Position numbers and translations under genes: made by a program
Virus record (IMG/VR): IMGVR_UViG_3300042544_001590
Location: 62,001 to 126,000 of that record
Reading direction: 5' to 3' (one strand)
Length of the DNA: 64,000 nt
Notes under the pieces: generated by a model
Seen by the model: the letters and a program-made list of their open reading frames with translations, nothing else
Told to the model about the DNA's origin: nothing
Database searches by the model: none
Shown here: positions 5,712-33,055 of the stretch, in pieces
Layout: every line of letters begins with the position of its first letter
Numbering within the stretch: the first letter of the stretch is position 1

Positions 5712-6104
5712 ATGAACAAAGACCAACTCATGCTTGAAAGCATCTACATGGAAATAACGAATCTCATTCAGGGGAACTTTGGAGGGGATCGTTACAAAAA
5801 AGAAGCTTTGGACGTATTCAGAAAATACGGGGAAGTTCGGGAAGGGGATGAAGTGGAAGGGGAGGATGCTCTGGTTATTGCAATGCTTTACAATGTGGCA
5901 GGGGATGATTGGGAATATTTCGAGGATTTGAATGGTAATGTCATCATAACCCGATTTGATTCGGAAGACCCCGATTCAAATATCATACATAGGGATTTTG
6001 GCAATGAGGAGGAATTCAATTTGGATGATATTATGAAGCAAGCGGAGAATAACGTAACCTTAACCCCCAAGGAATTTGTTGAGTATATTCACAATGTTCT
6101 GTGA
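5712..6104 (+). CDS. acidic hypothetical protein, possible internal head protein
   Basis: Late-type promoter; N-terminus MNKDQLMLESIYME. Confidence 0.75.
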   Translation: MNKDQLMLESIYMEITNLIQGNFGGDRYKKEALDVFRKYGEVREGDEVEGEDALVIAMLYNVAGDDWEYFEDLNGNVIITRFDSEDPDSNIIHRDFGNEEEFNLDDIMKQAENNVTLTPKEFVEYIHNVL

Positions 6105-6112
6105 TACCGACT

Positions 6113-6943
6113 CTACAAATCGAGTCCAAAATAGTCACTGATAGAATCTTGTATATATTCATCTTCTTCGGGGGTTAATTTATTATAAATATATTTCAAT
6201 CCTTCCACATCCCCATACTCATCAAGATCAGTTTCCAAAATGGACACAATCTTAGGGTTTCCAGAAAATCCTATGTTTTTATCAATTCTTCGGGAATCAC
6301 CCTTTTCATAATGTTTCATCTTTAATTTGGTGATGGAGTCTATTATGTTTCTGAAAGCATCATATGTAGTCCCCCGTATATTAAACATCTTTTTAAATGA
6401 TTCAACTTGATCTGTGGGTATTTTTTCTTCCAAAGGTCCAAATAGTAATATGTGTCCGTTGTTTGATATAATCTGCTTTAATCTCTGTTTTTGAATCGAA
6501 TTTATTTGAAATTTATCTTTTAGCTTATTCCAAAAATTCTTACTATTGATTGTGAGATATTCTTTAAATTTAGTCTTTTCTTTTGTGGATAAATCATTTA
6601 TTAATTCCTCAATTTGAGACTGATTTAGTGTTGATAGGGAATCGGTAATATAATCCTCGTCCGTGAATTTTTGCGTATATCCTCTGGAGCGAATTACCAC
6701 AATTAGCAGACTCTCATAATACCCCAACCAATCTGGCACGTTTTGCAATAGATAATCCAAATCAGAAGAAACATATACCCCCTGAAATGATTTATAATAA
6801 TTAAATTCTCCCCCCCAATTGTTTTTTTTATTAGGTATTAATCCGTTTTTGAGTATGGATCGTTTATATTCTCCCCTTGTTATATGATATAAGATTTCTT
6901 CGGGTTTTGTATTTTCTTCGAAAAATTCTAAAAAGCTTTGCAT
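6113..6943 (-). CDS. putative ADP-ribosyltransferase-fold protein
   Basis: LYHIT...SILKNGLIP...GVYVS resembles the ART/KptA/DarT-type H-x-T and Y-x-S strands; late promoter; MQSFLEFFEE N-terminus. Confidence 0.5.
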   Translation of the reverse strand: MQSFLEFFEENTKPEEILYHITRGEYKRSILKNGLIPNKKNNWGGEFNYYKSFQGVYVSSDLDYLLQNVPDWLGYYESLLIVVIRSRGYTQKFTDEDYITDSLSTLNQSQIEELINDLSTKEKTKFKEYLTINSKNFWNKLKDKFQINSIQKQRLKQIISNNGHILLFGPLEEKIPTDQVESFKKMFNIRGTTYDAFRNIIDSITKLKMKHYEKGDSRRIDKNIGFSGNPKIVSILETDLDEYGDVEGLKYIYNKLTPEEDEYIQDSISDYFGLDL

Positions 6944-7006
6944 TTCATTATTTAACCGATTTTCCAGTATTCGCCGGAACCCCTACGTGTAATATAGCAA
7001 TTTCGT

Positions 7007-7276
7007 TTATTGATTGCCGGAATCTGTTGGAATATCATTCCATTGTTTGATACATAATTGAGTTGGATATTCTTCCATGGGATAATCCACAATGTTGATT
7101 TGGTGGTCGAATTCACACATCCTACATTCCACCCATATGCATTGGTAATCGATCCCCTTCATGGATGTTGTCATACCCCCCGAATCAACTTCTATGTTAT
7201 CGCTTCCGCATTTGGGGCATGGTTTAGGTTCTTTTTTCGTTTCCATCAATCTATTTTCCACTCCTCCTCTTTCCAT
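7007..7276 (-). CDS. Lar-like zinc-ribbon protein
   Basis: PKPCPKCGS...IWVECRMC pattern. Confidence 0.5.
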   Translation of the reverse strand: MERGGVENRLMETKKEPKPCPKCGSDNIEVDSGGMTTSMKGIDYQCIWVECRMCEFDHQINIVDYPMEEYPTQLCIKQWNDIPTDSGNQ

Positions 7277-7446
7277 TGGTCATACCAGCTTTCCACTTCT
7301 TCCCATGTTAGATTCCAATCTTCACAGGACATGCAATCAGGATCAAGGCAATCGAAATATCCCGATGTTCCGCTCCACATGAGGAAACCCGTGGGACTCA
7401 CCAATCTCTCGTCGTTGAGCAATGCCTGTCTATGTTCCTCTTTCAT
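7246..7446 (-). CDS. small hypothetical protein
   Basis: ORF track; part of an overlapping minus-strand operon. Confidence 0.65.
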   Translation of the reverse strand: MKEEHRQALLNDERLVSPTGFLMWSGTSGYFDCLDPDCMSCEDWNLTWEEVESWYDQWKEEEWKID

Positions 7447-7670: not shown

Positions 7671-7676
7671 ATTATA

Positions 7677-8648: not shown

Positions 8649-8652
8649 ATTT

Positions 8653-8853: not shown

Positions 8854-8859
8854 GGATTC

Positions 8860-8887: not shown

Positions 8888-8943
8888 TAACTTGATTCTG
8901 CACGATAAACCCGTTCACTTTATTGTGCATTATCGGTTTATCG

Positions 8944-9798
8944 TCACATTATGGAGATCGTTCCCATATGCTTTCCGATCATGACGTTGAACATTTCTTC
9001 CAGAGCATATTTGAATTGATTTATATATTCCCAAGCTTCGTCTTCATCTTCCAACCTGTAATTACGCGCCGTGGAATTACCCCATGCTTTCTTATTACTG
9101 TCCTGTAGGAACTTGGGGGGATCGTTGAAATCCAATTCGCCATCGTGCAATAACCAATAAGCGAATGCTTCGTGGTAGAATTCCGTTGGTCTTGTCAATT
9201 TACCCATTCTTGCACTGCGGAATTTACCGATCTTTTGAAAGAAGTCCCTCACATAGAAATCGGAAGCATATCGTAAATCTCTGGAATTGCTTGTGTTTAT
9301 ATTGTAAGCCTGTTCAAATAGATTTTTAAGAATGCTTGAAATTTGCCTATTGATATAATTCAAATCATTATTTGAACGGAATGTGGCGGCAAATGAGTGT
9401 CCAATTCTGTGGGCAATTGTCCATGATGTCAGAGGGACTTTTTCTGCCGCCGCGTTATTGGTGAAAAATACGGTAATCTCATTTCCCTGTGGTTTGGGAA
9501 AATCTTCCCCAGCGGTCAACCCTAATTGTTGGTGTAGATACTCAGGAGTCACCAGACCCCTTTCCGCCTCTTTCCAAGCGTTGGGTTTCTTGACAAAATA
9601 TAAATTGAAATCCCAATTGCCAATGCGATTGAATGAATTTTCCAGCTTCTTCAGTCCTGCGGGAGAAGATAAAATACCAATGGATGCTTTGTCATAACCA
9701 TGTCGGTTTTTCTTGTCCTCCCACTTACCAATCTTTTGTAAATTGGAAAGAGCCATTTCTTGGTAAATTTGTTGTAGGGATAAATCATCCTTGTTCAT
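8944..9798 (-). CDS. hypothetical protein with zincin-like AHRIGH motif, possible internal head protein
   Basis: WTIAHRIGH and downstream HEAFA; late promoter; MNKDDLSLQQIYQEM N-terminus. Confidence 0.6.
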   Translation of the reverse strand: MNKDDLSLQQIYQEMALSNLQKIGKWEDKKNRHGYDKASIGILSSPAGLKKLENSFNRIGNWDFNLYFVKKPNAWKEAERGLVTPEYLHQQLGLTAGEDFPKPQGNEITVFFTNNAAAEKVPLTSWTIAHRIGHSFAATFRSNNDLNYINRQISSILKNLFEQAYNINTSNSRDLRYASDFYVRDFFQKIGKFRSARMGKLTRPTEFYHEAFAYWLLHDGELDFNDPPKFLQDSNKKAWGNSTARNYRLEDEDEAWEYINQFKYALEEMFNVMIGKHMGTISIM

Positions 9799-9819
9799 TC
9801 TTTTATTTAGAATTCCCGC

Positions 9820-10225: not shown

Positions 10226-10228
10226 ATT

Positions 10229-10694: not shown

Positions 10695-10766
10695 CGCCGA
10701 ATATATCAGGGGTAGATAAGCTGGCTCATAACCAGAAGGTCGGGGATTCGAATTCCTCTTCGGCAA
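10695..10766 (+). tRNA. tRNA-Met(CAT), initiator-like
   Basis: Cloverleaf with loop CTCATAA and C1:A72 mismatch; no encoded CCA. Confidence 0.85.
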
Positions 10767-10771
10767 CTTTA

Positions 10772-10845
10772 GCGTCTATGGTGTAATGGTAGCATCAAAC
10801 ACTTCCAATGTTTGGGTGTGGATTCAAATTCCACTGGACGCTCCA
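10772..10845 (+). tRNA. tRNA-Gly(TCC)
   Basis: Acceptor GCGTCTA/TGGACGC, loop CTTCCAA, T-loop TTCAAAT, encoded CCA. Confidence 0.92.
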
Positions 10846-10847
10846 AT

Positions 10848-10921
10848 TCAGGGATCATATAACGGCAGTATGGAACTCTCCAAAAGTTCTCGTGTGGATT
10901 TGACTTCCTCTCCCTGTGCCA
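10848..10921 (+). tRNA. tRNA-Trp(CCA), atypical
   Basis: Loop CTCCAAA, G73, CCA; T-loop TTTGACT, one T-T pair in the T-stem, U1:U72. Confidence 0.75.
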
Positions 10922-10926
10922 CTTTC

Positions 10927-11058
10927 ATGAAATACAAAAAGCTACGAAAGAAAATCAAAAATGATACCTCAACCTGCAAGTGGTTGAAATGGTTCAAGTG
11001 GAAAAGAACGTGTAAAGATAAAAAATATGACAATAACGGGACTACCGAAACACCTTGA
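10927..11058 (+). CDS. small basic peptide, 43 aa
   Basis: MKYKKLRKKIKND...; 3' part of ORF-track 10786..11058 lying downstream of the tRNAs. Confidence 0.4.
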   Translation: MKYKKLRKKIKNDTSTCKWLKWFKWKRTCKDKKYDNNGTTETP

Positions 11059-11374
11059 GAATTACTCCCTAGCAATTTTTGAATACTTTGCCACGGGGGA
11101 AGGTGTCACTACCGAAGTGGAATTATTATCATTTCCCGGACAAAAGCCAACGATTGGGTGGGAGGGATTATCAAACAACATCATACCAGCGGTAATTGAA
11201 AGGAAAGAAACCATGTATGAAAAGGAACATGTGTGGTTGGAATGGAATCCCGAATTCAAGGCAGCGTTTTTCGACAATTTTGGAGTCGGGGACTGGATGC
11301 AATTCCACAATTGCTGTGTGAAGCATGGTTCATGGATGAATCTGGTGAAGAAAGCGCATTATAATTTGTCATGA
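11027..11374 (+). CDS. hypothetical protein
   Basis: ORF track; operon context. Confidence 0.7.
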   Translation: MTITGLPKHLENYSLAIFEYFATGEGVTTEVELLSFPGQKPTIGWEGLSNNIIPAVIERKETMYEKEHVWLEWNPEFKAAFFDNFGVGDWMQFHNCCVKHGSWMNLVKKAHYNLS

Positions 11375-11595
11375 AATTCTCCAAGATTAAAAGATTCTGG
11401 ATCACCAATTTCGGAATGCCTGATATATCCTTCGGTATCCACATCTGCATGGACAAAAGGATTGACATCCACTTTCTCTGGTATATGATCAGCTTTGGCA
11501 GAGTTCCCATCTACGAAGAGAAGGGAAAGCTGTTCGCCGCCAGTAATTCCTATCACACCGGAAGATCGAAACGACTGAGAGCGGGAGTGCCTTAA
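11371..11595 (+). CDS. small hypothetical protein
   Basis: ORF track; 4-nt overlap; stop codon is the TAA of a motif copy. Confidence 0.7.
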   Translation: MKFSKIKRFWITNFGMPDISFGIHICMDKRIDIHFLWYMISFGRVPIYEEKGKLFAASNSYHTGRSKRLRAGVP

Positions 11596-11610
11596 AAACT
11601 AGAATACAAT
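11593..11610 (+). promoter_or_regulatory. TAAAAACTAG-AA-TACAAT promoter, 6 nt before ATG
   Basis: Same architecture as the array motif. Confidence 0.8.
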
Positions 11611-11616
11611 ACGAAT

Positions 11617-12075
11617 ATGAATCAAGAATTAATAACACACGACTCGGAGACACTGAAACATGTCAACGAGGTAAGAAACAACATATGGACTCTGATCAAA
11701 GAGTTGGATCATAGGGCGCAAGTTCATGATGCTTCCAAATTTGAAGAACCGGAGAGAAGTATCTTTGCCAGCAACACTTCCAAATTGGCGAAGACCCAAT
11801 ATGGGACGGATGAATATTCCAAGCTGTTGGAGGAAGTGAAACCAGCAATTGAACATCATTACTCAAAAAACACTCACCATCCCGAACATTGGCCGAACGG
11901 CATTGAGGACATGGATTTACTTGATCTTGTTGAAATGTTAGCAGATTGGGCGGCTGCAACAAAAAGAAATAAGAATGGTAACATCCATAAGTCAATCGAA
12001 CATAATCAGGAGAGATTTAAAATAACACCACAATTATCAAAAATTTTCACAAACACTGTAAATAGATATTTTTAA
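11617..12075 (+). CDS. HD-superfamily-like protein (DUF5662-like)
   Basis: VHDASKF...HHYSKNTHHPEHW...EMLADW pattern. Confidence 0.7.
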   Translation: MNQELITHDSETLKHVNEVRNNIWTLIKELDHRAQVHDASKFEEPERSIFASNTSKLAKTQYGTDEYSKLLEEVKPAIEHHYSKNTHHPEHWPNGIEDMDLLDLVEMLADWAAATKRNKNGNIHKSIEHNQERFKITPQLSKIFTNTVNRYF

Positions 12076-12077
12076 AC

Positions 12078-12500
12078 ATGAAACAAGTAAAATTAATCAT
12101 AGCAGCAGCGCATTCCGATACCGTATATTTCAATTATGGGGACGATTACTCGGATATCACACGAATTCTGGTGGAGGATCATTCCCCATGGGAAGAAGTC
12201 GAGGATGATCAAATCTTCGAACTCCAGAACTTTGTGAGTGATTTCAATGTCAGCAAAGAAAGAAAAGCTGGTAAATTCGCTTTCCTAATCGTCAGGGAAG
12301 ATCAGATTTCACCCCAATCAGCAATCAAATCCATTGTTGAGAAAAGGGAAAAGGAATTAAAAGAATCGAGGGAGAAGGAGCGTAAACGCAAGGAAGAAGC
12401 CGAACGCAAGAAACAAGAGAAGGAGATGAAGAAATTGGCGAAGACTAAGGAACAGAAAATCCTGCTTCTGGAACAATTGAAGAAAGAACTTGGAGAGTGA
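12078..12500 (+). CDS. hypothetical protein with charged coiled-coil C-terminus
   Basis: ORF track. Confidence 0.7.
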   Translation: MKQVKLIIAAAHSDTVYFNYGDDYSDITRILVEDHSPWEEVEDDQIFELQNFVSDFNVSKERKAGKFAFLIVREDQISPQSAIKSIVEKREKELKESREKERKRKEEAERKKQEKEMKKLAKTKEQKILLLEQLKKELGE

Positions 12501-12658
12501 AAACAGATGAACAATCATTGATCGATGTTTTAGCCAATGCTATAAGACATTCTTTACTATTTCCAAACAATCCAGCAACACCAATTATGAGGGAAGCATT
12601 AGATTTATACGAAAAAAGTAAAAAAGAACTTGAAAAAACAAACCAATCTGCTAAATAA
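12497..12658 (+). CDS. small hypothetical protein, 53 aa
   Basis: GTG start overlapping the upstream TGA; open frame to TAA at 12658. Confidence 0.5.
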   Translation: MKTDEQSLIDVLANAIRHSLLFPNNPATPIMREALDLYEKSKKELEKTNQSAK

Positions 12659-12761
12659 GAATAACGACATGAGCAACAACCAATATAATAATCAGGAGAA
12701 ACCAACACCGTATCGGTGGGGGCGCGAATGATCGTATTGTAATTATACATGTTGAATTCGC

Positions 12762-12788
12762 ACCCCATCTGAAAAGATGGGGTTTTTT
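12762..12788 (+). terminator. intrinsic terminator
   Basis: ACCCCATCT-GAAA-AGATGGGGT followed by a T-run. Confidence 0.88.
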
Positions 12789-12880
12789 ATTATCTGAGGG
12801 TTATGTGGCCGAACACATTAAAGTCCGAAAGGGAGATTGTGATGAAACAAGCACACTAAATGTTTTCAATATTTTTTTAT

Positions 12881-12968
12881 GGGTTTGTAGGTAAGTGGTT
12901 GAAACCAACGGACTTTTAATCCGTCTCCGAAAGGAACATCTCAGGTTCGAATCCTGATGAACCCACCA
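12881..12968 (+). tRNA. tRNA-Lys(TTT) with long variable arm
   Basis: Loop CTTTTAA, stem ACGGA/TCCGT, extra arm TCC-GAAA-GGA, T-loop TTCGAAT, CCA. Confidence 0.88.
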
Positions 12969-12969
12969 T

Positions 12970-13042
12970 ACACATGAACGCACCACGGCTGGGCGGGTGG
13001 ATTGTTACTCCATTGAACTTCGTTCGATCCGAAGCATGTGTG
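12970..13042 (+). tRNA. tRNA-Asn(GTT), atypical
   Basis: Acceptor ACACATG/CATGTGT, loop TTGTTAC, G73; A at position 8; no CCA. Confidence 0.75.
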
Positions 13043-13046
13043 CATT

Positions 13047-13121
13047 GATCCCATGGTGAAGTGGTTATCACCCCATACTTTCTATATGGTGTCCCCGATT
13101 CGAATTCGGGTGGGATCACCA
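13047..13121 (+). tRNA. tRNA-Glu(TTC)
   Basis: Acceptor GATCCCA/TGGGATC, loop CTTTCTA (U37), CCA. Confidence 0.88.
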
Positions 13122-13123
13122 AT

Positions 13124-13207
13124 TCTACAGTTCCTTAGTGGTCGAAAGGACTTGCCTTGTAAGCAAGATGCGTAAGCACATCGCCAGTTCGAATCTGGCC
13201 TGTAGAT
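13124..13207 (+). tRNA. tRNA-Thr(TGT) with long variable arm
   Basis: Acceptor TCTACAG/CTGTAGA, loop CTTGTAA, extra arm TGC-GTAA-GCA; no CCA. Confidence 0.85.
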
Positions 13208-13218
13208 CATTTTTTAAT

Positions 13219-13305
13219 GTGTTGTCTCTAATGATGGTGAATTAGGACGGTCTGTAAAATCGTTGCCTTCGGGCTTAGGGGATTCGAATTCCTCACAACA
13301 CACCA
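13219..13305 (+). tRNA. tRNA-Tyr(GTA)
   Basis: Loop CTGTAAA, long variable arm GCC-TTCG-GGC, CCA. Confidence 0.88.
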
Positions 13306-13307
13306 TA

Positions 13308-13383
13308 CAGGGATTGATGTAACTTGGTAGCATGAGACATTTGGATTGTCTTTGTTCGGATTCAACTTCCGAGTCCCTGACCA
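13308..13383 (+). tRNA. tRNA-Pro(TGG)
   Basis: C1-G72, A73, loop TTTGGAT (A37), CCA. Confidence 0.85.
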
Positions 13384-13392
13384 TTTTATAAT

Positions 13393-13472
13393 AGCTGCGT
13401 AGTGTAATGGTTCAGCACTGACGGTTTTGATCCGTCCAGAGTATCAGGGTTCAATTCCCACCGCAGCCACCA
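13393..13472 (+). tRNA. tRNA-Gln(TTG), irregular T-arm
   Basis: Loop TTTTGAT, stem GACGG/CCGTC, CCA; T-stem pairs fully only with an ATCA bulge. Confidence 0.75.
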
Positions 13473-13473: not shown

Positions 13474-14574
13474 TTAACTTACTCTAGATTTTGCATCATC
13501 AATTTCAGAACCCATTTTAGGTAGTGTAAAGTGTTCTTTACCTATTTCATAACCACCATACGGATCAATTCCCTGTTTTTTAATATTATTCAAAAATTCT
13601 TTATATTCGGGATTTGTATTGGTGGCATTGGTATATGTAGGCATTACCGCAACTCTACCATCGACCATATTAAATTGTATTTGACCTCCCATAAATATAG
13701 TCTTTGCTGCTGCCAATTGAACCCAATCATCCCACAATCTTTGTGAATACGCAGATTTTGTCACCACTCCAATAGCCTTGACAAAATCTATATAATCTTT
13801 TATAATTTGTTCACCCTTTGGTGATAGATTGTTGGTTTTAACCCCCTTTTCCGTTTTGAATGTTGGGGATTCTATCTGTTTTCCGCTGGTATCGGTAATT
13901 GATATGGGAAATCCATATATATCAGCATTGATATTATCAATACATCCCAATTTACCTGATAATAATTGAACTGAAAATGCAGCTTTAACTGTGGATGCAC
14001 CACTAAAATTTTTGATTAAAAATTTATATAATTCAAATTCATTATCGATAAGTCCTTTATTATAAATATTATCATATAAAAAATTTCTATTTTTCCAAAG
14101 ACTTTTTATATACCCCGATGCACCTTTGTAAAACCAATCCTTAACAGATTGTTTGATTCCGTTCAACCCTATAATATAGTCCACTGGTATATCTTTACCG
14201 TCAGTCTCCTTCACATATGCCACATAAACGGGAAACAAATTTCTAAATTTAGGCCAGCTAGTTCCAACAGTTCCAACCACCAAACTCAATACAAAAAACA
14301 TATTTTCTGCACTTTCACTCGCAAATTTATTAATAGCTGGGTTGTAATCGCAAAAAGATGATTTAGCATTCATCAAATCAGATTGATTTATTATGATAGT
14401 ATTTTCCTCCCCTTTATCGGTTCCCCGCTTATTAGGAATTATTACATCAATACCACCAATATTTGTTATAGTGTGGTTGGGATTTTTTTCAGCGGCAATT
14501 TTGGGGTCAAACGCCTCAATTAAAATTTTATATTTTGTATTTCGCATTTGGAAATATTCATAGAAACTGATCAT
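13474..14574 (-). CDS. putative HhH-type DNA glycosylase-like protein, possible internal head protein
   Basis: GASTVKAAFSVQLLSGKLGCIDNIN resembles a helix-hairpin-helix followed by a catalytic Asp; late promoter; MISFYEYFQ N-terminus. Confidence 0.5.
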   Translation of the reverse strand: MISFYEYFQMRNTKYKILIEAFDPKIAAEKNPNHTITNIGGIDVIIPNKRGTDKGEENTIIINQSDLMNAKSSFCDYNPAINKFASESAENMFFVLSLVVGTVGTSWPKFRNLFPVYVAYVKETDGKDIPVDYIIGLNGIKQSVKDWFYKGASGYIKSLWKNRNFLYDNIYNKGLIDNEFELYKFLIKNFSGASTVKAAFSVQLLSGKLGCIDNINADIYGFPISITDTSGKQIESPTFKTEKGVKTNNLSPKGEQIIKDYIDFVKAIGVVTKSAYSQRLWDDWVQLAAAKTIFMGGQIQFNMVDGRVAVMPTYTNATNTNPEYKEFLNNIKKQGIDPYGGYEIGKEHFTLPKMGSEIDDAKSRVS

Positions 14575-14606
14575 GGTATTATTTAGTATATTAATTAAAT
14601 ATAGAT

Positions 14607-16133
14607 ATGATCAGATTTCATAAATTATATCGCCAACTCATGCGGGAATACGTGGAGGATTTCGATGAAAAGTGGGAAAAGGCTGTTTCTGAATCGGAAG
14701 AACTTCAGGTTGCTTTGGATTTGATGAAGAATATCAAGGCGAAATTACAAGGAGAAATCTATATCGTTGGGGGGGTTCCCCGCGATCTTCTCATGGGCAA
14801 TACCATTGATGATGTGGATTTGGCTACCAACATTCCCGTGGAGGAATTGGAGAAACATTTTGAATTGAGAAACATTTCCAAGAACGATTCCCAACCCGTC
14901 TATGCCATTCTCTGGAAAGGTTATGTTTATGATCTGGCAAAATTCCGCACCGATTCTGGTGATATCGGGAGACAATCCAACGTATCAACTGAAACCGATT
15001 CATTTGAAAAGGATTCTGAGCGAAGAGATTTAACGATAAATTCTTTTGGTCTGGATGAAGAGGGTAAGATCGTGGATTATCAGGGTGGTCTGGAAGATTT
15101 GAAGAACAAGATCGTTCGTGCCGTGGGAGATGCCAAACAAAGATTTCTGGAAGACGCTACGAGAATCCTCCGTGTCTTTCGATTTGCTGCCAAGATGGAT
15201 TTTGAAATTGAGGATAATACCAAGAGGGCAGCAATTGAATTGAAACATCTCCTCCAAGACCCCAAGGCAATTTCCCAAGAAAGCATTTCCAAGGAATTTT
15301 TCAAGGCAGCAAAAACGGGACAAACGCTTGCAAATTTCCTGAAGAAATTACAGGACACGAAAATCCTCCATGACATCCTTCCCGAATTTACCACGATGGA
15401 AGGATTTGATCATGATCCCCAACACCACCCCGAAGGGGATTCCCAAGTTCTGGGTCACATCTACGAATGTCTAAAGGCATCCCCATACAAAGACCCTGTG
15501 ATCAATCTAGCTGTGCTTTTCCATGACTTCGGCAAAGCCACAACCAGAGGAAAGAAAGACAATGGTTTTAGCAATTATCATGGACACGAATCGGCGGGAG
15601 TTCCCATTGTAGAGGAAATCTTCAAACGCTTGCGCTTTGCTGAATTATCCCCCCAAGATAAAAAGAACATATTGGCGGCAGTTGATAAACACATGCTTGT
15701 CCATAATCTGGATAAGTTAAACATCAAGACTCTCACCAAGCTGATTCAGAACTCATCATGGGAAACCATCAAAGCGGTGGGCTATTGCGATGAAGCGTCC
15801 CGTGGTTCCGGTCTTTTCAACAAACAGGAATTTTGGGAGAAGATCAAAAGGGCGGAAGAAAAGGTTTCCAATATCGGGGGATCGGAAGATGAAACCAGAA
15901 AACGCCTGAAACAATATTTCAGTGGGGATAAATTGATGCAATGGTTTCCAATTCTCGTCAAGGATAAATCCAAATTCAAGGATATCACAGCAGCCTTACA
16001 GGAATATGTTTTAGAGGAATTGAATGCTGGGCGTGAGCCGAATGAAGAGGAAATGAAAACAATCGCTTCGGGCATTTTAAAGGGGAACCAATTCAATGAA
16101 TGGTTTTCCCACTATTCAAAGTTCGTGCTGTAA
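14607..16133 (+). CDS. cca: CCA-adding tRNA nucleotidyltransferase with HD domain
   Basis: VGGVPRDLLMG, DVDLAT, RRDLTINS, EDATRILRVFRF, LFHDFGK, HESAG. Confidence 0.93.
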   Translation: MIRFHKLYRQLMREYVEDFDEKWEKAVSESEELQVALDLMKNIKAKLQGEIYIVGGVPRDLLMGNTIDDVDLATNIPVEELEKHFELRNISKNDSQPVYAILWKGYVYDLAKFRTDSGDIGRQSNVSTETDSFEKDSERRDLTINSFGLDEEGKIVDYQGGLEDLKNKIVRAVGDAKQRFLEDATRILRVFRFAAKMDFEIEDNTKRAAIELKHLLQDPKAISQESISKEFFKAAKTGQTLANFLKKLQDTKILHDILPEFTTMEGFDHDPQHHPEGDSQVLGHIYECLKASPYKDPVINLAVLFHDFGKATTRGKKDNGFSNYHGHESAGVPIVEEIFKRLRFAELSPQDKKNILAAVDKHMLVHNLDKLNIKTLTKLIQNSSWETIKAVGYCDEASRGSGLFNKQEFWEKIKRAEEKVSNIGGSEDETRKRLKQYFSGDKLMQWFPILVKDKSKFKDITAALQEYVLEELNAGREPNEEEMKTIASGILKGNQFNEWFSHYSKFVL

Positions 16134-19418: not shown

Positions 19419-19670
19419 TCAACTATATCCAAGCTTTTTCAGAAACCGAAACACGGGATCAACGGCAACTTCCCCCAAATGTGCCAGATATTGGCGTTCA
19501 TCTTTCAGGGATTTCACCATAACTTTTCCATTTTTCTCCACATAACGGATAAATCCTTTTTTCACAGCATCGTCCAAAAGCTCAAACAAACGGCGAGTCT
19601 TGCCATGTTTGGCAATTTCCTCAATGATTTCCCCCACCATCTCTTCCAATAATTCCTGATCCTTGTTCAT
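19419..19670 (-). CDS. small hypothetical protein
   Basis: ORF track; MNKDQELLEEM N-terminus. Confidence 0.7.
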   Translation of the reverse strand: MNKDQELLEEMVGEIIEEIAKHGKTRRLFELLDDAVKKGFIRYVEKNGKVMVKSLKDERQYLAHLGEVAVDPVFRFLKKLGYS

Positions 19671-25723: not shown

Positions 25724-26866
25724 TTACATGACCAACATCAAAGGAGGGTCCATCGTGCCGTATCCACCTTCAACAAGGAAATTTTCAAGTTCTTTCTTCT
25801 CTTCCAAACCTTCTGAAAGAACGTTGGAACCATCAATGACCCCCCCTCCGGGTAGGGGGGTGTTGGATATCTTAGTGAGTATCCGACCCCACATAATCTT
25901 TGACATGGCCGTAGCGTATTCCAAAATCCATTTTTCCTTCACTAAATCCCTCAATGGTCTTTCCACATAACATGTGAGCAACCCATAGAATTGGGTATTC
26001 TTCGGCTGGGGAATCAAACGGAGATATTGTGTTCTTGCATCAAAATAGATGTCCCGACGAGTGGCAAACATTTTTTCGCGGGTATCAATCCAATCCTTGA
26101 CGGTGTGCCAAGACAGGATATCAAATCCATAGTTACCCAGCGAATAAGCATGATAACTTTGTTGTGCCATGGTTTGTTCAACGGAGAACAGTGTGTTTAC
26201 GCCCGTAGTAGAACCTTCCTCAAAGGCGATAACATCAACTACTTTACGGTAATCCATGACATCATAATCAAACATATTATTAAATGTGTTCACATCATCC
26301 TGTTGTTCACACTGTATTGTGAACGGTTTTTGGTAAGACTGTTGGAACAACACACCCAAACCAGCATCAAATTCCACGATAAGATCATACGTGGTTTGAT
26401 CAATGATCTGCATGGAAGTAATACCATCGGAAGGAACAGCACCACTCAATGCTGACGAAGCGGTGAAATATGCACTTGGAATCGTTGAAAGGGAAACATA
26501 CAAAGGTGTGGGAAGCGTAACTTCGTAATCCGGTTGTGGTCCTGTTCTTTTATCATTAAGCTTTTCAGATGGGGTGTAACCGGAATTTGCTACCGTAAAA
26601 AGGTGATCTAACCGCAAGCCTTTGTTACCCTCATATAATCGGCTGTCAAACAGAAGATATTCCTTAGTGTAACCACTATATACTGTATAGAAGTCAACCG
26701 CCATTGATATAGCTTCATACAACTGATCATAATGCAATTCCACATTAATCATAGGATGTCCCAAAGTTCTAAGGATACGTTCTCCAAGTCTTTGGTAGCA
26801 TTCTATTTTAGAATTCAGATTCGTTGACATGAATGCTGAAATCGGTTCCACTTGACATAAACTCAT
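25724..26866 (-). CDS. gp13: neck protein gp13-like
   Basis: LGHPMINVEL..DQLYEAI, WILEYATAMSK.MWG.IL.K, LPGGGVIDG. Confidence 0.85.
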   Translation of the reverse strand: MSLCQVEPISAFMSTNLNSKIECYQRLGERILRTLGHPMINVELHYDQLYEAISMAVDFYTVYSGYTKEYLLFDSRLYEGNKGLRLDHLFTVANSGYTPSEKLNDKRTGPQPDYEVTLPTPLYVSLSTIPSAYFTASSALSGAVPSDGITSMQIIDQTTYDLIVEFDAGLGVLFQQSYQKPFTIQCEQQDDVNTFNNMFDYDVMDYRKVVDVIAFEEGSTTGVNTLFSVEQTMAQQSYHAYSLGNYGFDILSWHTVKDWIDTREKMFATRRDIYFDARTQYLRLIPQPKNTQFYGLLTCYVERPLRDLVKEKWILEYATAMSKIMWGRILTKISNTPLPGGGVIDGSNVLSEGLEEKKELENFLVEGGYGTMDPPLMLVM

Positions 26867-26886
26867 AGTAGTATTTAATCAACCAT

Positions 26887-28572
26887 ATGAAATCAACGAA
26901 AAAATTAACATTGGAGGTCTTTATCCAAAGATCAAACGAAGCGCATAATAATTTTTATGACTATTCTAAATCAGAATATAAAAACGCAAATACTAAATTA
27001 ACCATAACTTGCCCAACCCATGGAGAATTCATACAGAAACCAGCGGATCACATGCGAGGATGTGGGTGTGTGTTATGTGGGAATTATAAAAACACGAGAT
27101 TGAAACCTTTTGAGCAATTCCTAGAAGAAGCTAATAAAAAACATGATAATTTTTATGATTATAGTAAAAGCATTTATATAAATTCCACCACTAAGATTAA
27201 CATAATTTGTCCTATTCATGGGGATTTCACACAAATTCCAAATTCTCATATTTCGGGTCAGGGATGTCCTAAATGTGGTCATTATAAAAATACAAATAAA
27301 AAGAACACCGAAGACTTTATTAAACGCTCTACGATTATACACAACAATAAATACGATTATTCAAAAGTTGAATATGATGGTAATAAGAAAAAGGTTATTA
27401 TAATATGCCCAACCCATGGAGAATTCATCCAAATTCCAAATGCACATTTACGGGGGGCTGGATGTTGGAACTGTAGTGTTGATTATAGAATGAACGAAAA
27501 AAGATCAAACAGTAAAGATTTTATAGAAAAAGCCAACATAGCCCATCAAAACAAATATGATTATTCATTAGTTAATTATTATAATAATTATCAAAAAATT
27601 CCCATAAAATGTCCTAAGCATGGGATATTCAATCAAAATCCGGGAAACCATTTACAAGGTGCTGGGTGTCCAAAATGCTCTTCAATTGAAAGTAAGTCTG
27701 AAACAAAAATAAAATCTATATTAGAGGAAACGGGAATCGATTTTATACAACAAGATAGAACTTTAATCAACCCATTTGAGATAGATTTCGTAATTCCTGA
27801 TTATAAAATTGGAATTGAGTTTAACGGTATTTACTATCATTCGGAAGATAATGGAGGTAAAAATAAAAAATACCATCTGAATAAAACAGATCGGTGTGAA
27901 AAAGAGGGATATCAATTAATCCATATTTTCGAAAATGAATACATACAAAAATATAATTTGTTGAGATTTAAAATAAAATCACTATTAAATAAAAATAAAT
28001 ATCGCATATTTGCTAGGAAGTGTATTGTCCGAGAAATAACACCTCAAGAGAAATGCAGATTTAATAAAAAATATCACATACAAGGGGATTCCCAATCATG
28101 TGTTAATTTGGGGTTGTTTTATAAAGAGAGGTTGGTTCAAGTTATGACTTTTTCTAAAAGAAGAAAAGCATTAGGTTCTAAACACGTTAAAGGTGAATAT
28201 GAACTTTCCAGAATGTCTTCTATGAAAGGATTTACCATTGTGGGTGGCGCATCCAAGCTATTAAAACATTTTGAGAAACATTATAATCCTAAGAAGTTAA
28301 TCTCTTATGCTGATAGAAGGTGGAGTAAAGGAGATGTGTATTATAAAATGGGGTTTTCATTTATTAGAAACACCCCACCAAATTATTGGTATTTTTATAA
28401 AAAACGCGCTGATAAGCCATTACACCACCGATACAAATTCGCTAAACATACTCTTGAAAAACAATTGGAAATATTTGACCCAAATTTAACAGAGTGGGAA
28501 AACATGAAAAACAATCATTATGATCGTATCTGGGACTCTGGTAATATGCTATTTGAAAAGGTGTATGATTAA
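26887..28572 (+). CDS. Hef-like free-standing homing endonuclease
   Basis: Four YDYSK...ICP.HG.F.Q.P..H..G.GC repeats, EIDFVIP...GIEFNG.YYH nuclease motif, C-terminal GGASKL..ISYADRRWS; antisense to the structural genes. Confidence 0.82.
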   Translation: MKSTKKLTLEVFIQRSNEAHNNFYDYSKSEYKNANTKLTITCPTHGEFIQKPADHMRGCGCVLCGNYKNTRLKPFEQFLEEANKKHDNFYDYSKSIYINSTTKINIICPIHGDFTQIPNSHISGQGCPKCGHYKNTNKKNTEDFIKRSTIIHNNKYDYSKVEYDGNKKKVIIICPTHGEFIQIPNAHLRGAGCWNCSVDYRMNEKRSNSKDFIEKANIAHQNKYDYSLVNYYNNYQKIPIKCPKHGIFNQNPGNHLQGAGCPKCSSIESKSETKIKSILEETGIDFIQQDRTLINPFEIDFVIPDYKIGIEFNGIYYHSEDNGGKNKKYHLNKTDRCEKEGYQLIHIFENEYIQKYNLLRFKIKSLLNKNKYRIFARKCIVREITPQEKCRFNKKYHIQGDSQSCVNLGLFYKERLVQVMTFSKRRKALGSKHVKGEYELSRMSSMKGFTIVGGASKLLKHFEKHYNPKKLISYADRRWSKGDVYYKMGFSFIRNTPPNYWYFYKKRADKPLHHRYKFAKHTLEKQLEIFDPNLTEWENMKNNHYDRIWDSGNMLFEKVYD

Positions 28573-28706
28573 TGTAACTCCACATTAATCATAGGATGTC
28601 CCAAGGTTCTTAAAATCCGCTCCCCCAAACGCTGGTAGCACTCAATCTTGGAATTGAGATTGGTGGACATGAAAGCGGAAATTGGTTCAACTTGGCAGAG
28701 ACTCAT
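28569..28706 (-). pseudogene. truncated duplicate of gp13 codons 1-45
   Basis: Translates to MSLCQVEPISAFMSTNLNSKIECYQRLGERILRTLGHPMINVELH*, identical to the gp13 N-terminus; has its own TAAATA-N5-ATG. Confidence 0.93.
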
Positions 28707-30196: not shown

Positions 30197-30226
30197 TATT
30201 TTGTAATTCATAGATTAAATAATATT

Positions 30227-30901
30227 ATGGATTTTTACGATTTTGTTCAACAACACGCCAATTTTATAAAAATTATTCTAGGGGCGATTGGTGCCATTAT
30301 ATTGACTTGGAAACAACTCAGGACTTTTATTGTCAAAAAATATAAGGAACGTCAGGAATATATTAAATCTCGGAATTCCATACCAGAATCTTTAAAAAAT
30401 ATTCAAGGAACTGTGTCAAATATTGATGATCGTTTAAAAAATGTGGAATATGAAATATCCCCGAATGGTGGGGGTTCCATGCGGGATTCTGTGAAAATAA
30501 TCAAAGCTGAAATAGAGGCTATGTTTTGGCTCAATCCCAAACCATCGTTTAGAGTTACCTCCAAAGGTCTTAATATTATGGTGAATGAAGCATATTGTAA
30601 TCTGTGTGCAACATCATCAGAAGAATTGCTTAGATTAAATTGGAAAAATTTCGTGGAAGACGAACATCAACTTGATGATTACATGCGTAGATGGGAGGAT
30701 TCAACCGATGTATTTTCACAGTTTTCTGGTAAATTAAAATTTAAAAACTCCAAAGGCGAATATATGGGCGAGTGGATTGTGAAAGTCCGTCCTTTGGGGG
30801 CAATCGATTCGGGAAACGATTTCCTGTGGCATGGGACAATTTACCCCTTTGATCAGAAATCAAAGGAATATGCCAAGACTTATGGTATTCCTTTGAGTTA
30901 A
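30227..30901 (+). CDS. membrane-anchored coiled-coil plus PAS-like domain protein
   Basis: N-terminal TM helix, NGGGSMRD linker, FRVTSKGLNIMVNEAYCNL...EELLRLNWKNFV PAS-like pattern; late promoter. Confidence 0.62.
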   Translation: MDFYDFVQQHANFIKIILGAIGAIILTWKQLRTFIVKKYKERQEYIKSRNSIPESLKNIQGTVSNIDDRLKNVEYEISPNGGGSMRDSVKIIKAEIEAMFWLNPKPSFRVTSKGLNIMVNEAYCNLCATSSEELLRLNWKNFVEDEHQLDDYMRRWEDSTDVFSQFSGKLKFKNSKGEYMGEWIVKVRPLGAIDSGNDFLWHGTIYPFDQKSKEYAKTYGIPLS

Positions 30902-32706
30902 ACCTCCGCTGGTGGTGCTTCAGGAACATCCGCTGGTGGTTCTTCCCCTCCTAGATCAGCTTCTTCCCCATCACCTATTGCTGCTGGTCCGCCGCCGAAG
31001 TCTGGAACGCCGCCACCACCGCCTCCACCACCCATATCAGGCATACCACCTTCGCCACCACCTTCAGCTTGTTGAGCTAAAAGATTGCGCCACTCGGGAC
31101 CCGATGACCTGATTTGCTCGATTTCAAACATGTGTTCCGCTTCCACCTTCTTAAAGTGTAGGTTGGCAAGGATATCGGAATCTTTCCAATCCAGATATTT
31201 CTTCATAGCATAGATTGTGGATACCATTTCATTACCCGTGATATTATTGAAAGTCTCGATCTTGAGATTGAGCTTCTGGCTCTCCCGCATATCATAGAAA
31301 TTGGTGGGAACATTGAATTCCACGCGGATATTGTCATCGAACAAATCCCAATCATCGAACATGTCCTTGAACTTGAGGTGTGTGATAAACGCTCTCTTGA
31401 TACCTTGGGCAAAGCGTTGTTGTTGACGAATGATCATCTTGGCAAACTTCAGTTCTTCCCGAAGCATCTCCGTTCCATCATTATAACCCGTTTCATTATT
31501 CAAACGAGAAGTTGGAGTCTTGAGAGAACGATACAATTTCTTGATGAACCAATCCAGAGCATCCAAATTACCATCCGACATTTGACCACCAAATGTCTCA
31601 ACAGTAGTTGCTTCTTGTCCCTGTCTCTTGGCAAACCAGAACGAATCCAAGGTGGATTGCGGGGCGTATTTCTTGACGATATCCCCTTGGTCGATGTCAA
31701 AGGTCTTGGTTGACCAGTATTGGCTCTGTAGCTTGCGTAGGTAGGCTTCCGCTTGAGGAACGGGCAATCTCCCCACATCCACGTTAAAGAGGAAGCGGAG
31801 GGGCGCGTGAACCATCCTGTGGATCACCACGGAATCCTCAATCATGGAAAGCTGTCTATAAGCTCTGCGGCAATTCTCAATGAAAGGAATAATAAAATCT
31901 TTGGTTTCATTGTATTGCCCACTGTTCACATAAAGGACTTGGTTCTGTTCAAAGGGAATGTATTCGTAGCGTTCCACTTTTTTGTTATCAACGCTGGAAA
32001 AGATCGGCTTCTTGTAAATGAACGCTTTCACCAACATCGTCTGGATGTTGTCATATACGGGATCAAATTGTTCGGCAGGAAGATTCTTGATAGCCACAAC
32101 CCCTTGTTTAATATAATCATCTTTTAGAATCAATTCAAAGAACAGTTCCCCTTCAATGAGAAATTGTCTAAAATAATTCCACCCATTGTCTTCCAGTTCC
32201 ATCATGGCAACGAAACGGGAGAATTCCTTCTCAATCTCTTCTTTCTTTTCTGATTCCAGATCGGTGTTGCGGATTGTGAGGGTTACAATCTCCCCATTCT
32301 CATCCACATTGATCGTCTCATCACAAATCTCATCCATGGCATCTGCCACTTCGGAGTAAGCGGCAATCATGCGGTAATCCCGCAAACGTCCGGGTTTCTC
32401 CTCCGAAGCTTGGGAATACATCAAATCCGTAAAGGACTTGTCTTGATAGATGGCGGAAAATGCCGTGTTGTTCCAGTCGTTATTAAGAGCTACGGAATTA
32501 CGAGCAATCGCTTCCGGTCTGCGTAAACCAATCTTCTGGAAATATTTATATTTTGTATTCTTCGCTTCGTCAGGAGTCTTCTCAATGAAATTCCCACGAT
32601 TCTTCAGATAGGACTGCATGTTCCTATCAAAAGTGGAACCTTTACCGTCATTACTAACGTAGGATTTATTTGAAGATTGTGTAGAAGAACTGTCGGAACC
32701 CGCCAT
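30898..32706 (-). CDS. gp20: portal protein gp20
   Basis: EVADAMDEICDE, QLSMIEDSVVIHRMVHAP.R, DSFWFAKRQG, EELKFAKMI.RQQQRF; Gly-rich acidic tail. Confidence 0.93.
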   Translation of the reverse strand: MAGSDSSSTQSSNKSYVSNDGKGSTFDRNMQSYLKNRGNFIEKTPDEAKNTKYKYFQKIGLRRPEAIARNSVALNNDWNNTAFSAIYQDKSFTDLMYSQASEEKPGRLRDYRMIAAYSEVADAMDEICDETINVDENGEIVTLTIRNTDLESEKKEEIEKEFSRFVAMMELEDNGWNYFRQFLIEGELFFELILKDDYIKQGVVAIKNLPAEQFDPVYDNIQTMLVKAFIYKKPIFSSVDNKKVERYEYIPFEQNQVLYVNSGQYNETKDFIIPFIENCRRAYRQLSMIEDSVVIHRMVHAPLRFLFNVDVGRLPVPQAEAYLRKLQSQYWSTKTFDIDQGDIVKKYAPQSTLDSFWFAKRQGQEATTVETFGGQMSDGNLDALDWFIKKLYRSLKTPTSRLNNETGYNDGTEMLREELKFAKMIIRQQQRFAQGIKRAFITHLKFKDMFDDWDLFDDNIRVEFNVPTNFYDMRESQKLNLKIETFNNITGNEMVSTIYAMKKYLDWKDSDILANLHFKKVEAEHMFEIEQIRSSGPEWRNLLAQQAEGGGEGGMPDMGGGGGGGGVPDFGGGPAAIGDGEEADLGGEEPPADVPEAPPAEV

Positions 32707-32746
32707 ACTTATTATTTAGGGTGAATCTTCAATTATTCAATGAAAT

Positions 32747-33055
32747 CTATTTGGGTATTTCAAAAGTGGAACCATCTGGTAATTGAACTGCTGTTGTGGA
32801 CGATGGTAACATACCAGTCTCAATCGCATCATATAAAGCATCTGGAAAATATTGTTGTTGATACTCGCTCATCGGAAATTTAAAAGTTACTGGTTCTCCA
32901 CCACGAGAATATCCCATCAACATTTCCAATTCACCATCCGGCGTTCTGGTTGAAAGATTTCCAAATTCATCTTGCTCCAATTTAACAATACCTGATTGTT
33001 CGGAATACATCTCGGTTATGAGATTTGAAATTGCAAGTTGATCTTTCGTGGTCAT
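32747..33055 (-). CDS. hypothetical protein, possible internal head protein
   Basis: Late promoter; MTTKDQLAISNLITEM N-terminus. Confidence 0.7.
   Translation of the reverse strand: MTTKDQLAISNLITEMYSEQSGIVKLEQDEFGNLSTRTPDGELEMLMGYSRGGEPVTFKFPMSEYQQQYFPDALYDAIETGMLPSSTTAVQLPDGSTFEIPK

What the first reader, a model, noticed from the sequence alone, without database searches (positions are those of the whole stretch)
5712..33055. Scattered late genes share capsid-targeting-like N-termini, including the CCA enzyme
Seen: late-promoter genes begin MQSFLEFFEE (6943), MISFYEYFQ (14574), MIRFHKLYRQLMRE (cca, 14607), and a second type MNKDQLMLESIYME (5712), MNKDDLSLQQIYQEM (9798), MTTKDQLAISNLITEM (33055), plus MNKDQELLEEM (19670, downstream of a late gene). 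Known: T4 internal proteins carry an N-terminal capsid-targeting sequence of the MKTYQEFIAE type that gp21 removes after Glu. Inference: these enzymes (ART-like, glycosylase-like, zincin-like, CCA-adding) may be packaged and injected, acting before any phage transcription. A virion-delivered tRNA-repair enzyme would be unusual.
Basis: partly seen in the sequence, partly recalled or inferred. Interest (0 to 1): 0.62.

Follow-up and report, generated by a model that had tools for sequence, protein, structure and literature searches.

The report
Capsid-targeting leaders on phage late enzymes
An uncultured, distant relative of phage T4 carries T4's short head-loading tag on many unrelated late enzymes, including a tRNA CCA-adding enzyme, so it probably injects a ready-made enzyme kit with its DNA; no virion has been examined.

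Summary
All seven N-termini are at the stated coordinates, and six sit 5 nt behind a TAAATA late-promoter box.

The window belongs to a complete 207-kb T4-like phage from a metagenome. Its capsid protein is about 33% identical to any cultured phage. It encodes a gp21-family prohead protease, a scaffold and a gp55 homologue.

- **Type 1 leader.** M-x-[S/T/P]-[F/Y]-x-x-[F/Y]-Φ, usually with Glu at position 10. It starts 8 genes here (0.18 expected) and 19 in five related genomes (0.7 expected). The same pattern finds IPI, IPII and IPIII in T4 and nothing in three other T4-like phages.
- **Type 2 leader.** It has a Φ-x-x-Φ-Y-x-x-Φ core and is also enriched (45 versus 10.5 expected).

The leaders sit on at least 35 unrelated protein families. 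Codon usage shows they are selected as amino acids. The two types replace each other on orthologues: about 87 of 120 CCA-enzyme orthologues carry type 1 and at least 6 carry type 2.

Cargo includes the CCA-adding enzyme, a PARP-like ADP-ribosyltransferase and an HhH-GPD glycosylase-like protein. "Zincin-like" was not confirmed.

Packaging, cleavage and injection are inferred, not shown.

The parts
6113..6943 (-). 276-aa late gene: type-1 leader (residues 1-10, nt 6914-6943, MQSFLEFFEE) followed by a PARP/DarT-like H-Y-E ADP-ribosyltransferase domain
   Evidence: Start and TAAATA+5 nt. Across 28 family members H20, Y57 and E96 are invariant, and 8 of the 28 hit Pfam PARP. ESM Atlas gives DarT/PARP leads. 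Close homologues keep type-1 leaders.
13474..14574 (-). 366-aa late gene: type-1 leader (MISFYEYFQ), a linker, an invariant Glu20 in a Φ-Φ-Φ-E|AFDP site (nt 14515-14574 cover residues 1-20), then an HhH-GPD glycosylase-like body (residues ~62-348)
   Evidence: in 25 homologues the leader motif is kept while its letters vary, and E20 is invariant. AF2 model pLDDT 73. VIA Z 10.8 to Tm1821 Ogg, and the next ~20 rows are all HhH-GPD glycosylases. Foldseek probability 0.94.
14607..16133 (+). 508-aa class II CCA-adding enzyme (PolyA_pol head + HD domain) with a ~30-aa N-terminal extension. Residues 1-14 (nt 14607-14648) form a leader intermediate between types 1 and 2.
   Evidence: Pfam PF01743 1.5e-25 and PF01966 1.7e-6; phrog_2244 4e-62, with the profile starting at residue 50. 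Leaders on orthologues.
14575..14606 (.). 32-bp spacer holding two back-to-back late promoters (TAAATA boxes), one for each divergent cargo gene
5712..6104 (+). 130-aa acidic late protein with a type-2 leader (residues 1-14, Φ-x-E ending at 14). Function unknown.
8944..9798 (-). 284-aa late protein with a type-2 leader (residues 1-14). The leader/body boundary ...Y-x-E|MAL(S/T)NL is conserved. Invariant HxxxH and E206/E210. Fold unknown.
   Evidence: the G002 orthologue carries a type-1 leader plus an extra module in front of the same boundary. No fold match.
32747..33055 (-). 102-aa acidic late protein with a type-2-like leader ending in I-T-E (residue 15), lying immediately upstream of the portal gene. 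Possibly a prohead core component.
   Evidence: (a syntenic 135-aa gene lies next to the portal in G005).
19419..19670 (-). 83-aa protein with a weak type-2-like start and no late promoter of its own. Doubtful member.
   Evidence: its G002 homologue has the type-2 core.
46892..47554 (-). gp21-family prohead serine protease, the presumed leader-removing enzyme. Its own N-terminus carries L-I-A-E at residues 6-9.
   Evidence: PF03420 5.7e-27, above the cut-off. Alignment with T4 gp21.
45557..46444 (-). gp22-like scaffolding protein, the presumed docking partner in the prohead core. Its N-terminus carries L-F-S-E.
   Evidence: Position between protease and MCP, and alignment across the clade and with T4 gp22.
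44033..45493 (-). gp23-type major capsid protein. A conserved W-C-[YFIL]-x-E|[SAG] motif (Glu58, about nt 45320-45322) is the likely maturation cleavage site.
   Evidence: PF07068 5.6e-84. Alignment of six clade MCPs with T4 gp23.
46482..46883 (-). 133-aa highly charged late protein between the protease and the scaffold. Candidate internal or core protein.
30898..32706 (-). Portal protein
   Evidence: phrog_213 2e-85.
10695..13472 (+). Cluster of 8 tRNA genes next to the CCA gene. Most encode their own CCA.

Best explanation
The shared N-termini are capsid targeting propeptides of the T4 type.

Late in infection, gp55-type promoters express a set of unrelated enzymes. Each begins with a 10-15-residue amphipathic, aromatic helix.
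- Type 1 places the hydrophobic triad at residues 4, 7 and 8.
- Type 2 has the same kind of triad shifted about four residues downstream, behind an MNKD-like prefix.

The helix docks the protein onto the scaffolding core while the prohead assembles. The gp21-family protease then cuts after a Glu in a Φ-x-E motif and frees the enzyme inside the head. The cut sites would be residue 10 in the ART-like protein, residue 20 in the glycosylase-like protein and residue 14 in the 284-aa protein. The enzymes leave with the DNA at the next infection and act before any phage gene is expressed.

Cargo in this genome:
- a CCA-adding enzyme with an HD domain (tRNA 3'-end repair)
- a PARP-like ADP-ribosyltransferase (the counterpart of T4 Alt)
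- an HhH-GPD glycosylase-like protein
- a retropepsin-like protease
- a kinase-like protein
- several proteins of unknown function

Shown: the motif, its enrichment, its modular spread, the swapping of leader types on orthologues, the conserved Glu sites, and the presence of protease, scaffold and late sigma factor.

Inferred: docking, cleavage, packaging and injection.
For: 1. **Match to the tested T4 determinants.** Residue 4 is aromatic in 27 of 27 strict leaders, and residues 7 and 8 are aromatic or hydrophobic. Glu is at position 10 in 14 of 27, although the search pattern does not ask for it. T4 IPII and IPIII read MKTYQEFIAE. Positions 4 and 7 drive targeting and 8 and 10 drive processing (PMC9026906).
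2. **The pattern is specific.** It retrieves the T4 internal proteins and finds nothing in three other T4-like genomes.
3. **Modularity.** Relaxed-pattern leaders sit on 35 body-homology families that share no other similarity.
4. **Selection acts on the amino acids.** Ser3 is coded by both AGY and TCN codons, and Phe codons follow genome usage.
5. **Leader types swap on orthologues** in front of a fixed boundary: the CCA enzyme, the 284-aa family, and one 366-aa homologue that joins a type-2 prefix to a type-1 core.
6. **Conserved Glu sites** of the Φ-x-E kind: E20 is invariant in 26 sequences, and the MCP has W-C-[YFIL]-x-E at its propeptide boundary.
7. **The machinery is present:** PF03420 protease, scaffold, gp55 homologue.
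8. **Late promoters** stand directly before 5 of the 8 strict-leader genes, against 14% of all genes (Fisher 0.002).
9. **The cargo are enzymes of the takeover or counter-defence kind**. Distant ART homologues carry other CTS-like starts.
Against: There is no direct evidence. The phage is uncultured, and no virion proteome, cleavage assay or structure exists. The complex prediction could not be run.

The P3 residue is mostly Phe or Tyr rather than the Leu or Ile of T4 gp21 sites. Only about half of the strict leaders have Glu exactly at position 10.

Φ-x-E motifs are common, so finding one in every leader is weak evidence. The patterns were designed after seeing the data. This is offset by the independent genomes, the controls and the regex-free test.

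The cargo are large and mostly acidic or neutral, unlike the small basic T4 internal proteins. Some type-2-like starts sit on proteins in tail or baseplate regions that may simply be structural.

Late expression of a CCA enzyme next to a tRNA cluster needs no packaging to make sense.
Confidence: 0.65

Rival explanations
1. The leader is a docking peptide for some other partner or place, not the prohead core. Candidates are a PIP-box-like clamp-binding motif (x-x-x-Φ-x-x-aromatic-aromatic, as at the N-terminus of some glycosylases), a chaperone tag, or a tag for a replication or assembly compartment. Alternatively it is a pro-sequence that keeps the enzymes inactive until late.
For: The type-1 spacing Φ4-x-x-Φ7-Φ8 resembles clamp-binding boxes (my own knowledge, not tested here). 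One cargo has a DNA-glycosylase fold. The leaders are predicted as short free helices in front of the folded body.
Against: A clamp or replisome tag makes no sense on a CCA-adding enzyme, a PARP-like ART, a retropepsin-like protease or a Nudix protein. The closest sequence match is the experimentally defined T4 CTS, including the Glu at position 10. Conserved Φ-x-E boundaries point to removal by the prohead protease.
Confidence: 0.15
2. The leader, together with its promoter, is a portable recombination cassette or a relic of common descent. Under this view a conserved promoter-plus-first-codons block lets genes be shuffled between phages, and the peptide has no targeting role.
For: The promoter, the 5-nt spacer and the leader always travel together. 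Leaders are swapped between orthologues and genes are fused or split at these points.
Against: The nucleotide sequence is not conserved. Ser3 uses both codon families and non-motif positions vary freely, while the aromatic positions and the Glu are kept. That pattern indicates selection on the peptide. Several leaders lie inside operons without a promoter of their own.
Confidence: 0.07
3. The N-terminal bias is a by-product of translation or transcription start constraints on leaderless late mRNAs, such as AT-rich early codons or a downstream box.
For: TAAATA lies 5 nt before the ATG, so late mRNAs are probably leaderless. The T4 late-transcription review notes AT-richness just downstream of the late TATA box (PMC2988020).
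Against: Structural late genes with the same promoter and spacing (MCP-adjacent genes, portal, scaffold, adaptor) lack the motif. The motif also occurs on genes without a late promoter. Codons vary synonymously. T4 uses the same peptide on mRNAs that have Shine-Dalgarno leaders.
Confidence: 0.05

Closest known systems
[quoted passage not shown]
   Same: An N-terminal decapeptide directly after Met, on unrelated late proteins. It has an aromatic residue at 4, an aromatic or hydrophobic residue at 7 and 8, and Glu near 10. A gp21-family protease and a gp22-like scaffold are present. One regex retrieves both sets.
   Different: The phage is only about 33% identical to any T4-like isolate in its capsid protein. 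P3 is usually Phe or Tyr rather than Ile or Leu. There are 8 or more strict-leader genes per genome instead of 3-4. A second leader class with a Tyr-centred core is interchangeable with the first. The cargo are 130-970-aa enzymes rather than small basic proteins.
T4 Alt, a packaged and injected ADP-ribosyltransferase processed by gp21
   Same: An ART-fold enzyme expressed late with a short N-terminal propeptide ending in Φ-x-E, presumed to modify host targets immediately on injection (PMC9026906).
   Different: The protein here is an H-Y-E (PARP/DarT-like) enzyme of 276 aa, not Alt's family, and shows no sequence similarity to Alt. Its target is unknown.
Propeptide-bearing ejection proteins of giant phages phiKZ, 201phi2-1 and SPN3US (PMC5694885)
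   Same: Many head-internal proteins are processed after Glu by a diverged gp21 homologue. N-termini are conserved between otherwise diverged proteins.
   Different: Their propeptides are mostly over 100 residues long, their cleavage motifs are A/S/G-x-E, and no short transferable decapeptide has been defined.
P1 DarB N-terminal capsid targeting signal (PMC9024508)
   Same: An N-terminal signal sufficient to load a large anti-restriction enzyme into the head.
   Different: The signal is unrelated in sequence, no protease removal is described, and head assembly works differently.

Membership tests
T4-type capsid targeting sequence (CTS) | A short leader directly after the initiator Met, shared by otherwise unrelated proteins | tested here: met
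   8 genes in this genome and 27 in six genomes fit the strict pattern. Relaxed-pattern leaders fall in 35 body-homology families, with no body similarity between them.
T4-type capsid targeting sequence (CTS) | Targeting determinants at residues 4 and 7 (aromatic in IPIII) | tested here: met
   Residue 4 is F in 24 and Y in 3 of 27. Residue 7 is F in 21 and Y in 6 of 27; the search pattern itself requires F or Y at both, so these counts do not test the feature. In the regex-free test, position 4 is aromatic in 26% of late genes versus 12% of others (P 3e-8); position 7 shows no significant excess (P 0.19). The determinants are taken from PMC9026906.
T4-type capsid targeting sequence (CTS) | A processing site L/I-X-E with Glu at about residue 10 | tested here: met
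   E10 occurs in 14 of 27 leaders without being part of the pattern. The others have Glu at 9-12 or at a conserved later site, for example the invariant E20. P3 is mostly F or Y, which differs from T4.
T4-type capsid targeting sequence (CTS) | A gp21-family prohead protease and a scaffolding core encoded by the same phage | tested here: met
   PF03420 at 91 bits (cut-off 27). A gp22-like scaffold lies between the protease and the MCP.
T4-type capsid targeting sequence (CTS) | Late expression | tested here: met
   A TAAATA box lies 5 nt before the ATG of six of the seven quoted genes, and a gp55 homologue is present.
T4-type capsid targeting sequence (CTS) | The leader is sufficient for encapsidation, is removed in the head, and the protein is present in virions and injected | not testable with these tools
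Class II CCA-adding enzyme | PolyA_pol head domain plus HD domain above the Pfam cut-offs | tested here: met
   PF01743 at 90.4 bits (cut-off 23), PF01966 at 28.8 bits (cut-off 22), phrog_2244 at 4e-62.
H-Y-E (PARP/DarT-like) ADP-ribosyltransferase | A conserved His, Tyr and Glu triad and a family profile match | tested here: inconclusive
   H20, Y57 and E96 are invariant in 28 sequences, and 8 of the 28 homologues hit PF00644 (best 5e-6). The window protein itself has no Pfam hit. Atlas leads score 0.92 and TM 0.4-0.6.
HhH-GPD DNA glycosylase superfamily | The fold, plus the helix-hairpin-helix and catalytic Asp | tested here: inconclusive
   The fold criterion is met: Z 10.8, 194 residues aligned to Ogg 3n0u, followed by about 20 HhH-GPD rows. 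The invariant K197 and D213 lie where the motif is expected, but that placement is by eye only. There is no Pfam hit.
Zincin metalloprotease (for 8944-9798) | An HExxH motif and the zincin fold | tested here: not met
   The motif is H-R-I-G-H, without the Glu. The best VIA Z is 4.4, on helical hairpins only. Foldseek probability is at most 0.10 for zincins.

The most novel reading that the evidence does not exclude
This widespread uncultured T4-like clade loads its capsid with a first-strike enzyme kit through two interchangeable leader classes. Part of the kit is an RNA-repair module: a CCA-adding/HD enzyme, in some relatives fused into one polyprotein with a Nudix domain and an HhH-GPD-like domain and perhaps cut apart by the prohead protease. 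It would be the first virion-delivered tRNA 3'-end repair enzyme. The leader would allow injected effectors to be read directly from metagenomic phage genomes.
Probability: 0.45. Interest if true: 0.78.

Novelty: new variant of a known kind. Interest (0 to 1): 0.66.

Why it matters
Proteins injected with phage DNA act before any phage gene is expressed, so they are the first line against host defences. Only a handful are known, and they come from a few model phages.

If the T4 targeting peptide is conserved and expanded in a distant, environmentally common clade, a ten-residue motif would predict the injected proteome of uncultured phages from sequence alone. Here it points to unexpected cargo: a tRNA CCA-adding enzyme, a PARP-like ART, a glycosylase-like protein and a Nudix protein.

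A pre-made tRNA-repair enzyme would imply that hosts attack tRNA 3' ends very early in infection, or that the phage needs the tRNA pool repaired at once.

The leaders could also serve as packaging tags for protein delivery in phages other than T4.

Tried and rejected
- Megablast of 7 kb against cultured phages found no match.
- The search for related loci with the 276-aa protein found nothing, and the word search found a single 94% homologue. The full HMMER search was needed to find the family.
- A unified pattern demanding Φ-x-x-Φ-Φ-x-E gave only 2-3-fold enrichment. I kept it as an idea, not as evidence.
- My first type-2 regex was too rigid and missed known members. It was replaced by the Tyr-centred core.
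- The ESM Atlas lead DUF7178 for the 366-aa protein was not backed by Pfam. The fold search gave HhH-GPD instead.
- The 284-aa model has no convincing fold match.
- PDB sequence searches for the kinase-like, 199-aa and 288-aa proteins gave only sub-threshold rows. "Kinase-like" therefore rests on a weak PHROG hit and motifs seen by eye. My by-eye GNAT guess for the 199-aa protein is dropped.
There are therefore no transcript-start data and no docking test, and read laying was not used.
- Paralogy as the cause of the shared N-termini was rejected.

Full report
**What the window is.** The 64-kb window is bases 62001-126000 of a complete 207,489-bp virus record with direct terminal repeats.
- It is a T4-like phage. 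It encodes a gp23-type capsid protein (PF07068, 5.6e-84), a gp21-family prohead protease (PF03420, 5.7e-27) and a scaffold gene between them.
- It also has a portal (phrog_213) and a gp55 late-sigma homologue.
- The lineage is distant from cultured phages. The capsid protein is at most about 34% identical to any phage in the collection, and 7 kb of DNA finds nothing.
- IMG/VR holds hundreds of relatives. I fetched five of them whole or nearly whole: G001 to G005, with 63-92% MCP identity.

**The observation.** Six have TAAATA exactly 5 nt before the ATG; 19670 does not. The same promoter-to-ATG spacing occurs at about 50 ORFs in this genome.

In window coordinates their starts are at -55465, 64911, 66503, 85910, 95680 and 130883 for type 1, and at 76407, 89254 and 96581 for type 2.

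**Is it more than chance?**
- *Type 1, this genome.* The pattern ^M.[STP][FY]..[FY][FYILVT] starts 8 genes against 0.18 expected (Poisson 2e-11).
- *Type 1, independent data.* I wrote the pattern after seeing the data, so the independent sets matter more. It starts 19 genes in the five relatives against 0.72 expected. In T4 it starts four genes: IPI, IPII, IPIII and gp61.1. It starts none in cyanophage S-SM1, pelagiphage HTVC008M or vibriophage KVP40.
- *Glu at position 10.* It is present in 14 of 27 leaders although the pattern does not ask for it.
- *Regex-free profile.* Aromatic residues make up 26% at position 4 of late-promoter genes versus 12% elsewhere (P 3e-8), and 20% versus 12% at position 8.
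- *Type 2.* The core Φ-x-x-Φ-Y-x-x-Φ, with Tyr at residues 8-18, occurs 45 times against 10.5 expected in the clade. It occurs 5 times against 0.38 among late genes of this genome. The four control phages are at chance.

**What kind of signal is it?**
- The bearers are not paralogues. Blastp finds no similarity among them within the genome, and the bodies of 60 relaxed-pattern proteins fall into 35 families. Type-2 bearers are equally diverse.
- Selection acts on the peptide. Ser3 is coded by AGT, AGC and all TCN codons, and Phe codons follow genome usage.
- Within one family the motif positions stay while the other letters drift. This holds for the 25 homologues of the 366-aa protein.
- The two leader types replace each other on orthologues.
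  - Of 120 CCA-enzyme orthologues (59-98% identical), about 87 begin with a type-1 leader and at least 6 with a type-2 leader. In all of them the leader sits just before the same conserved D-D-F-S-D-K-W block. Most of the rest are gene calls that start at an internal Met or are fragments.
  - The 284-aa family carries type 2 in most genomes. In G002 it carries type 1 plus an extra module, and the boundary ...Y-x-E|M-A-L is the same.
  - One 366-aa homologue joins an MINKD prefix to a type-1 core.

I therefore read type 2 as the same hydrophobic triad moved about four residues downstream. That reading is an inference.

**Comparison with T4.** I read the T4 leaders from NC_000866: IPII and IPIII begin MKTYQEFIAE, and IPI begins MKTFKEF. 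According to PMC9026906:
- the first ten residues of IPIII suffice for packaging;
- residues 4 and 7 carry the targeting and residues 8 and 10 the processing;
- gp21 cuts after Glu in L/I-X-E.

The leaders here match at exactly those positions. The difference is that Phe or Tyr usually stands at position 8.

Likely protease sites are conserved elsewhere too.
- Glu20 in Φ-Φ-Φ-E|A-F-D-P is invariant in 26 sequences of the 366-aa family.
- All six clade MCPs have W-C-[YFIL]-x-E|[SAG] at the end of the conserved N-terminal block.
- The protease and the scaffold themselves begin with L-I-A-E and L-F-S-E motifs, as T4 gp21 and gp22 do.
- Every catalogued leader has a Φ-x-E within residues 6-22. That motif is common, so this point is weak.

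**The cargo.**
- *CCA-adding enzyme (14607-16133).* This assignment is solid: PolyA_pol head and HD domains are both above their cut-offs. Its first ~30 residues precede the part covered by family profiles. The adjacent tRNA genes mostly encode their own CCA, so repair is a more likely role than maturation.
- *276-aa protein.* It belongs to a family with invariant His20, Tyr57 and Glu96, and 8 of 28 members hit Pfam PARP. Distant members carry other CTS-like starts of the M-K-I-x-E-L-L-x-E kind.
- *366-aa protein.* Its model (pLDDT 73) matches HhH-GPD glycosylases: Z 10.8 to Ogg, followed by about 20 further members of that superfamily.
- *Other bearers in this genome.* One is a retropepsin-like PF05618 protein and another has a weak kinase-like signal. 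A third carries an HExxH motif, seen by eye only.
- *Bearers in the relatives.* These include Nudix, peptidase M15 and DUF6267 proteins.
- *284-aa protein.* It has an invariant HxxxH but no recognisable fold, so "zincin-like" is not supported.
- *Fusions.* In G004 the glycosylase-like domain, the CCA enzyme and a Nudix domain form one 968-aa ORF behind a single leader, and a leader-like segment sits at the internal junction. Many database orthologues show similar fusions.

**Verdict.** The best explanation is a T4-type capsid targeting system with an enlarged and unusual cargo set (confidence 0.65). The alternatives fit the codon data, the cargo variety and the T4 match less well. They are a docking tag for another partner, a recombination cassette, and a side effect of leaderless translation.

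Nothing here shows packaging directly.

I found no paper in the library describing a virion-packaged CCA-adding enzyme. I also found none describing CTS-type leaders outside the T-even group. The library is incomplete, so absence there is weak evidence of novelty.

Noticed in passing
window-wide, e.g. 14575-14606; also 5695-5711, 6944-6960, 33056-33072: TAAATA lies exactly 5 nt (rarely 6) before the ATG of about 50 ORFs, with no Shine-Dalgarno sequence. The T4 late TATA box sits at the -10 position (PMC2988020), so late mRNAs should start at or next to the AUG and be leaderless. Divergent gene pairs share 32-34-bp spacers with back-to-back boxes. All five relatives show the same. No paper linking leaderless mRNAs with T4-like late promoters was found.
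   Followed up: partly
window 25724-28706: The promoter and first 45 codons of the adaptor-like gene (start 26866, minus strand) are repeated at 28572-28706. The two copies have identical amino acids but only about 80% nucleotide identity. They flank a 561-aa plus-strand gene (26887-28572) that has paralogues at 41757-43208 and beyond the window. It looks like a mobile endonuclease-type insertion with a recoded target copy.
   Followed up: partly
L132/L133 (G004 46369-49275) and proteins P0027-P0061: CCA-enzyme orthologues occur in several fusion architectures: glycosylase-like+CCA(+Nudix) at 750-970 aa, Nudix+CCA at about 635 aa, and CCA+acetyltransferase at 659 aa. In G004 a leader-like segment sits at the internal junction. 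This may be a polyprotein cut by the prohead protease.
   Followed up: partly
window 10695-13472: Of the eight tRNA genes, several are called unusually long (80-88 nt for Lys, Thr, Tyr and Gln). Most encode their own CCA. The lengths were not examined.
   Followed up: no
window 46482-46883 (-): A 133-aa, highly charged late protein lies between the protease and the scaffold. It begins M-G-K-T-Y-K-H-L, which is the T4 CTS offset by one residue. It is a candidate internal or core protein.
   Followed up: no
T4 NC_000866 18966-19130 (L198): The control scan picked up T4 gp61.1, a 54-aa hypothetical protein next to the primase gene. It starts MKTFKEFIKE, a CTS-like N-terminus.
   Followed up: no
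window 30227-30901 (+): This late gene starts M-D-F-Y-D-F and has a predicted membrane helix at about residues 13-28. It is an aromatic N-terminus that is probably not cargo, which shows that loose versions of the pattern give false positives.
   Followed up: no
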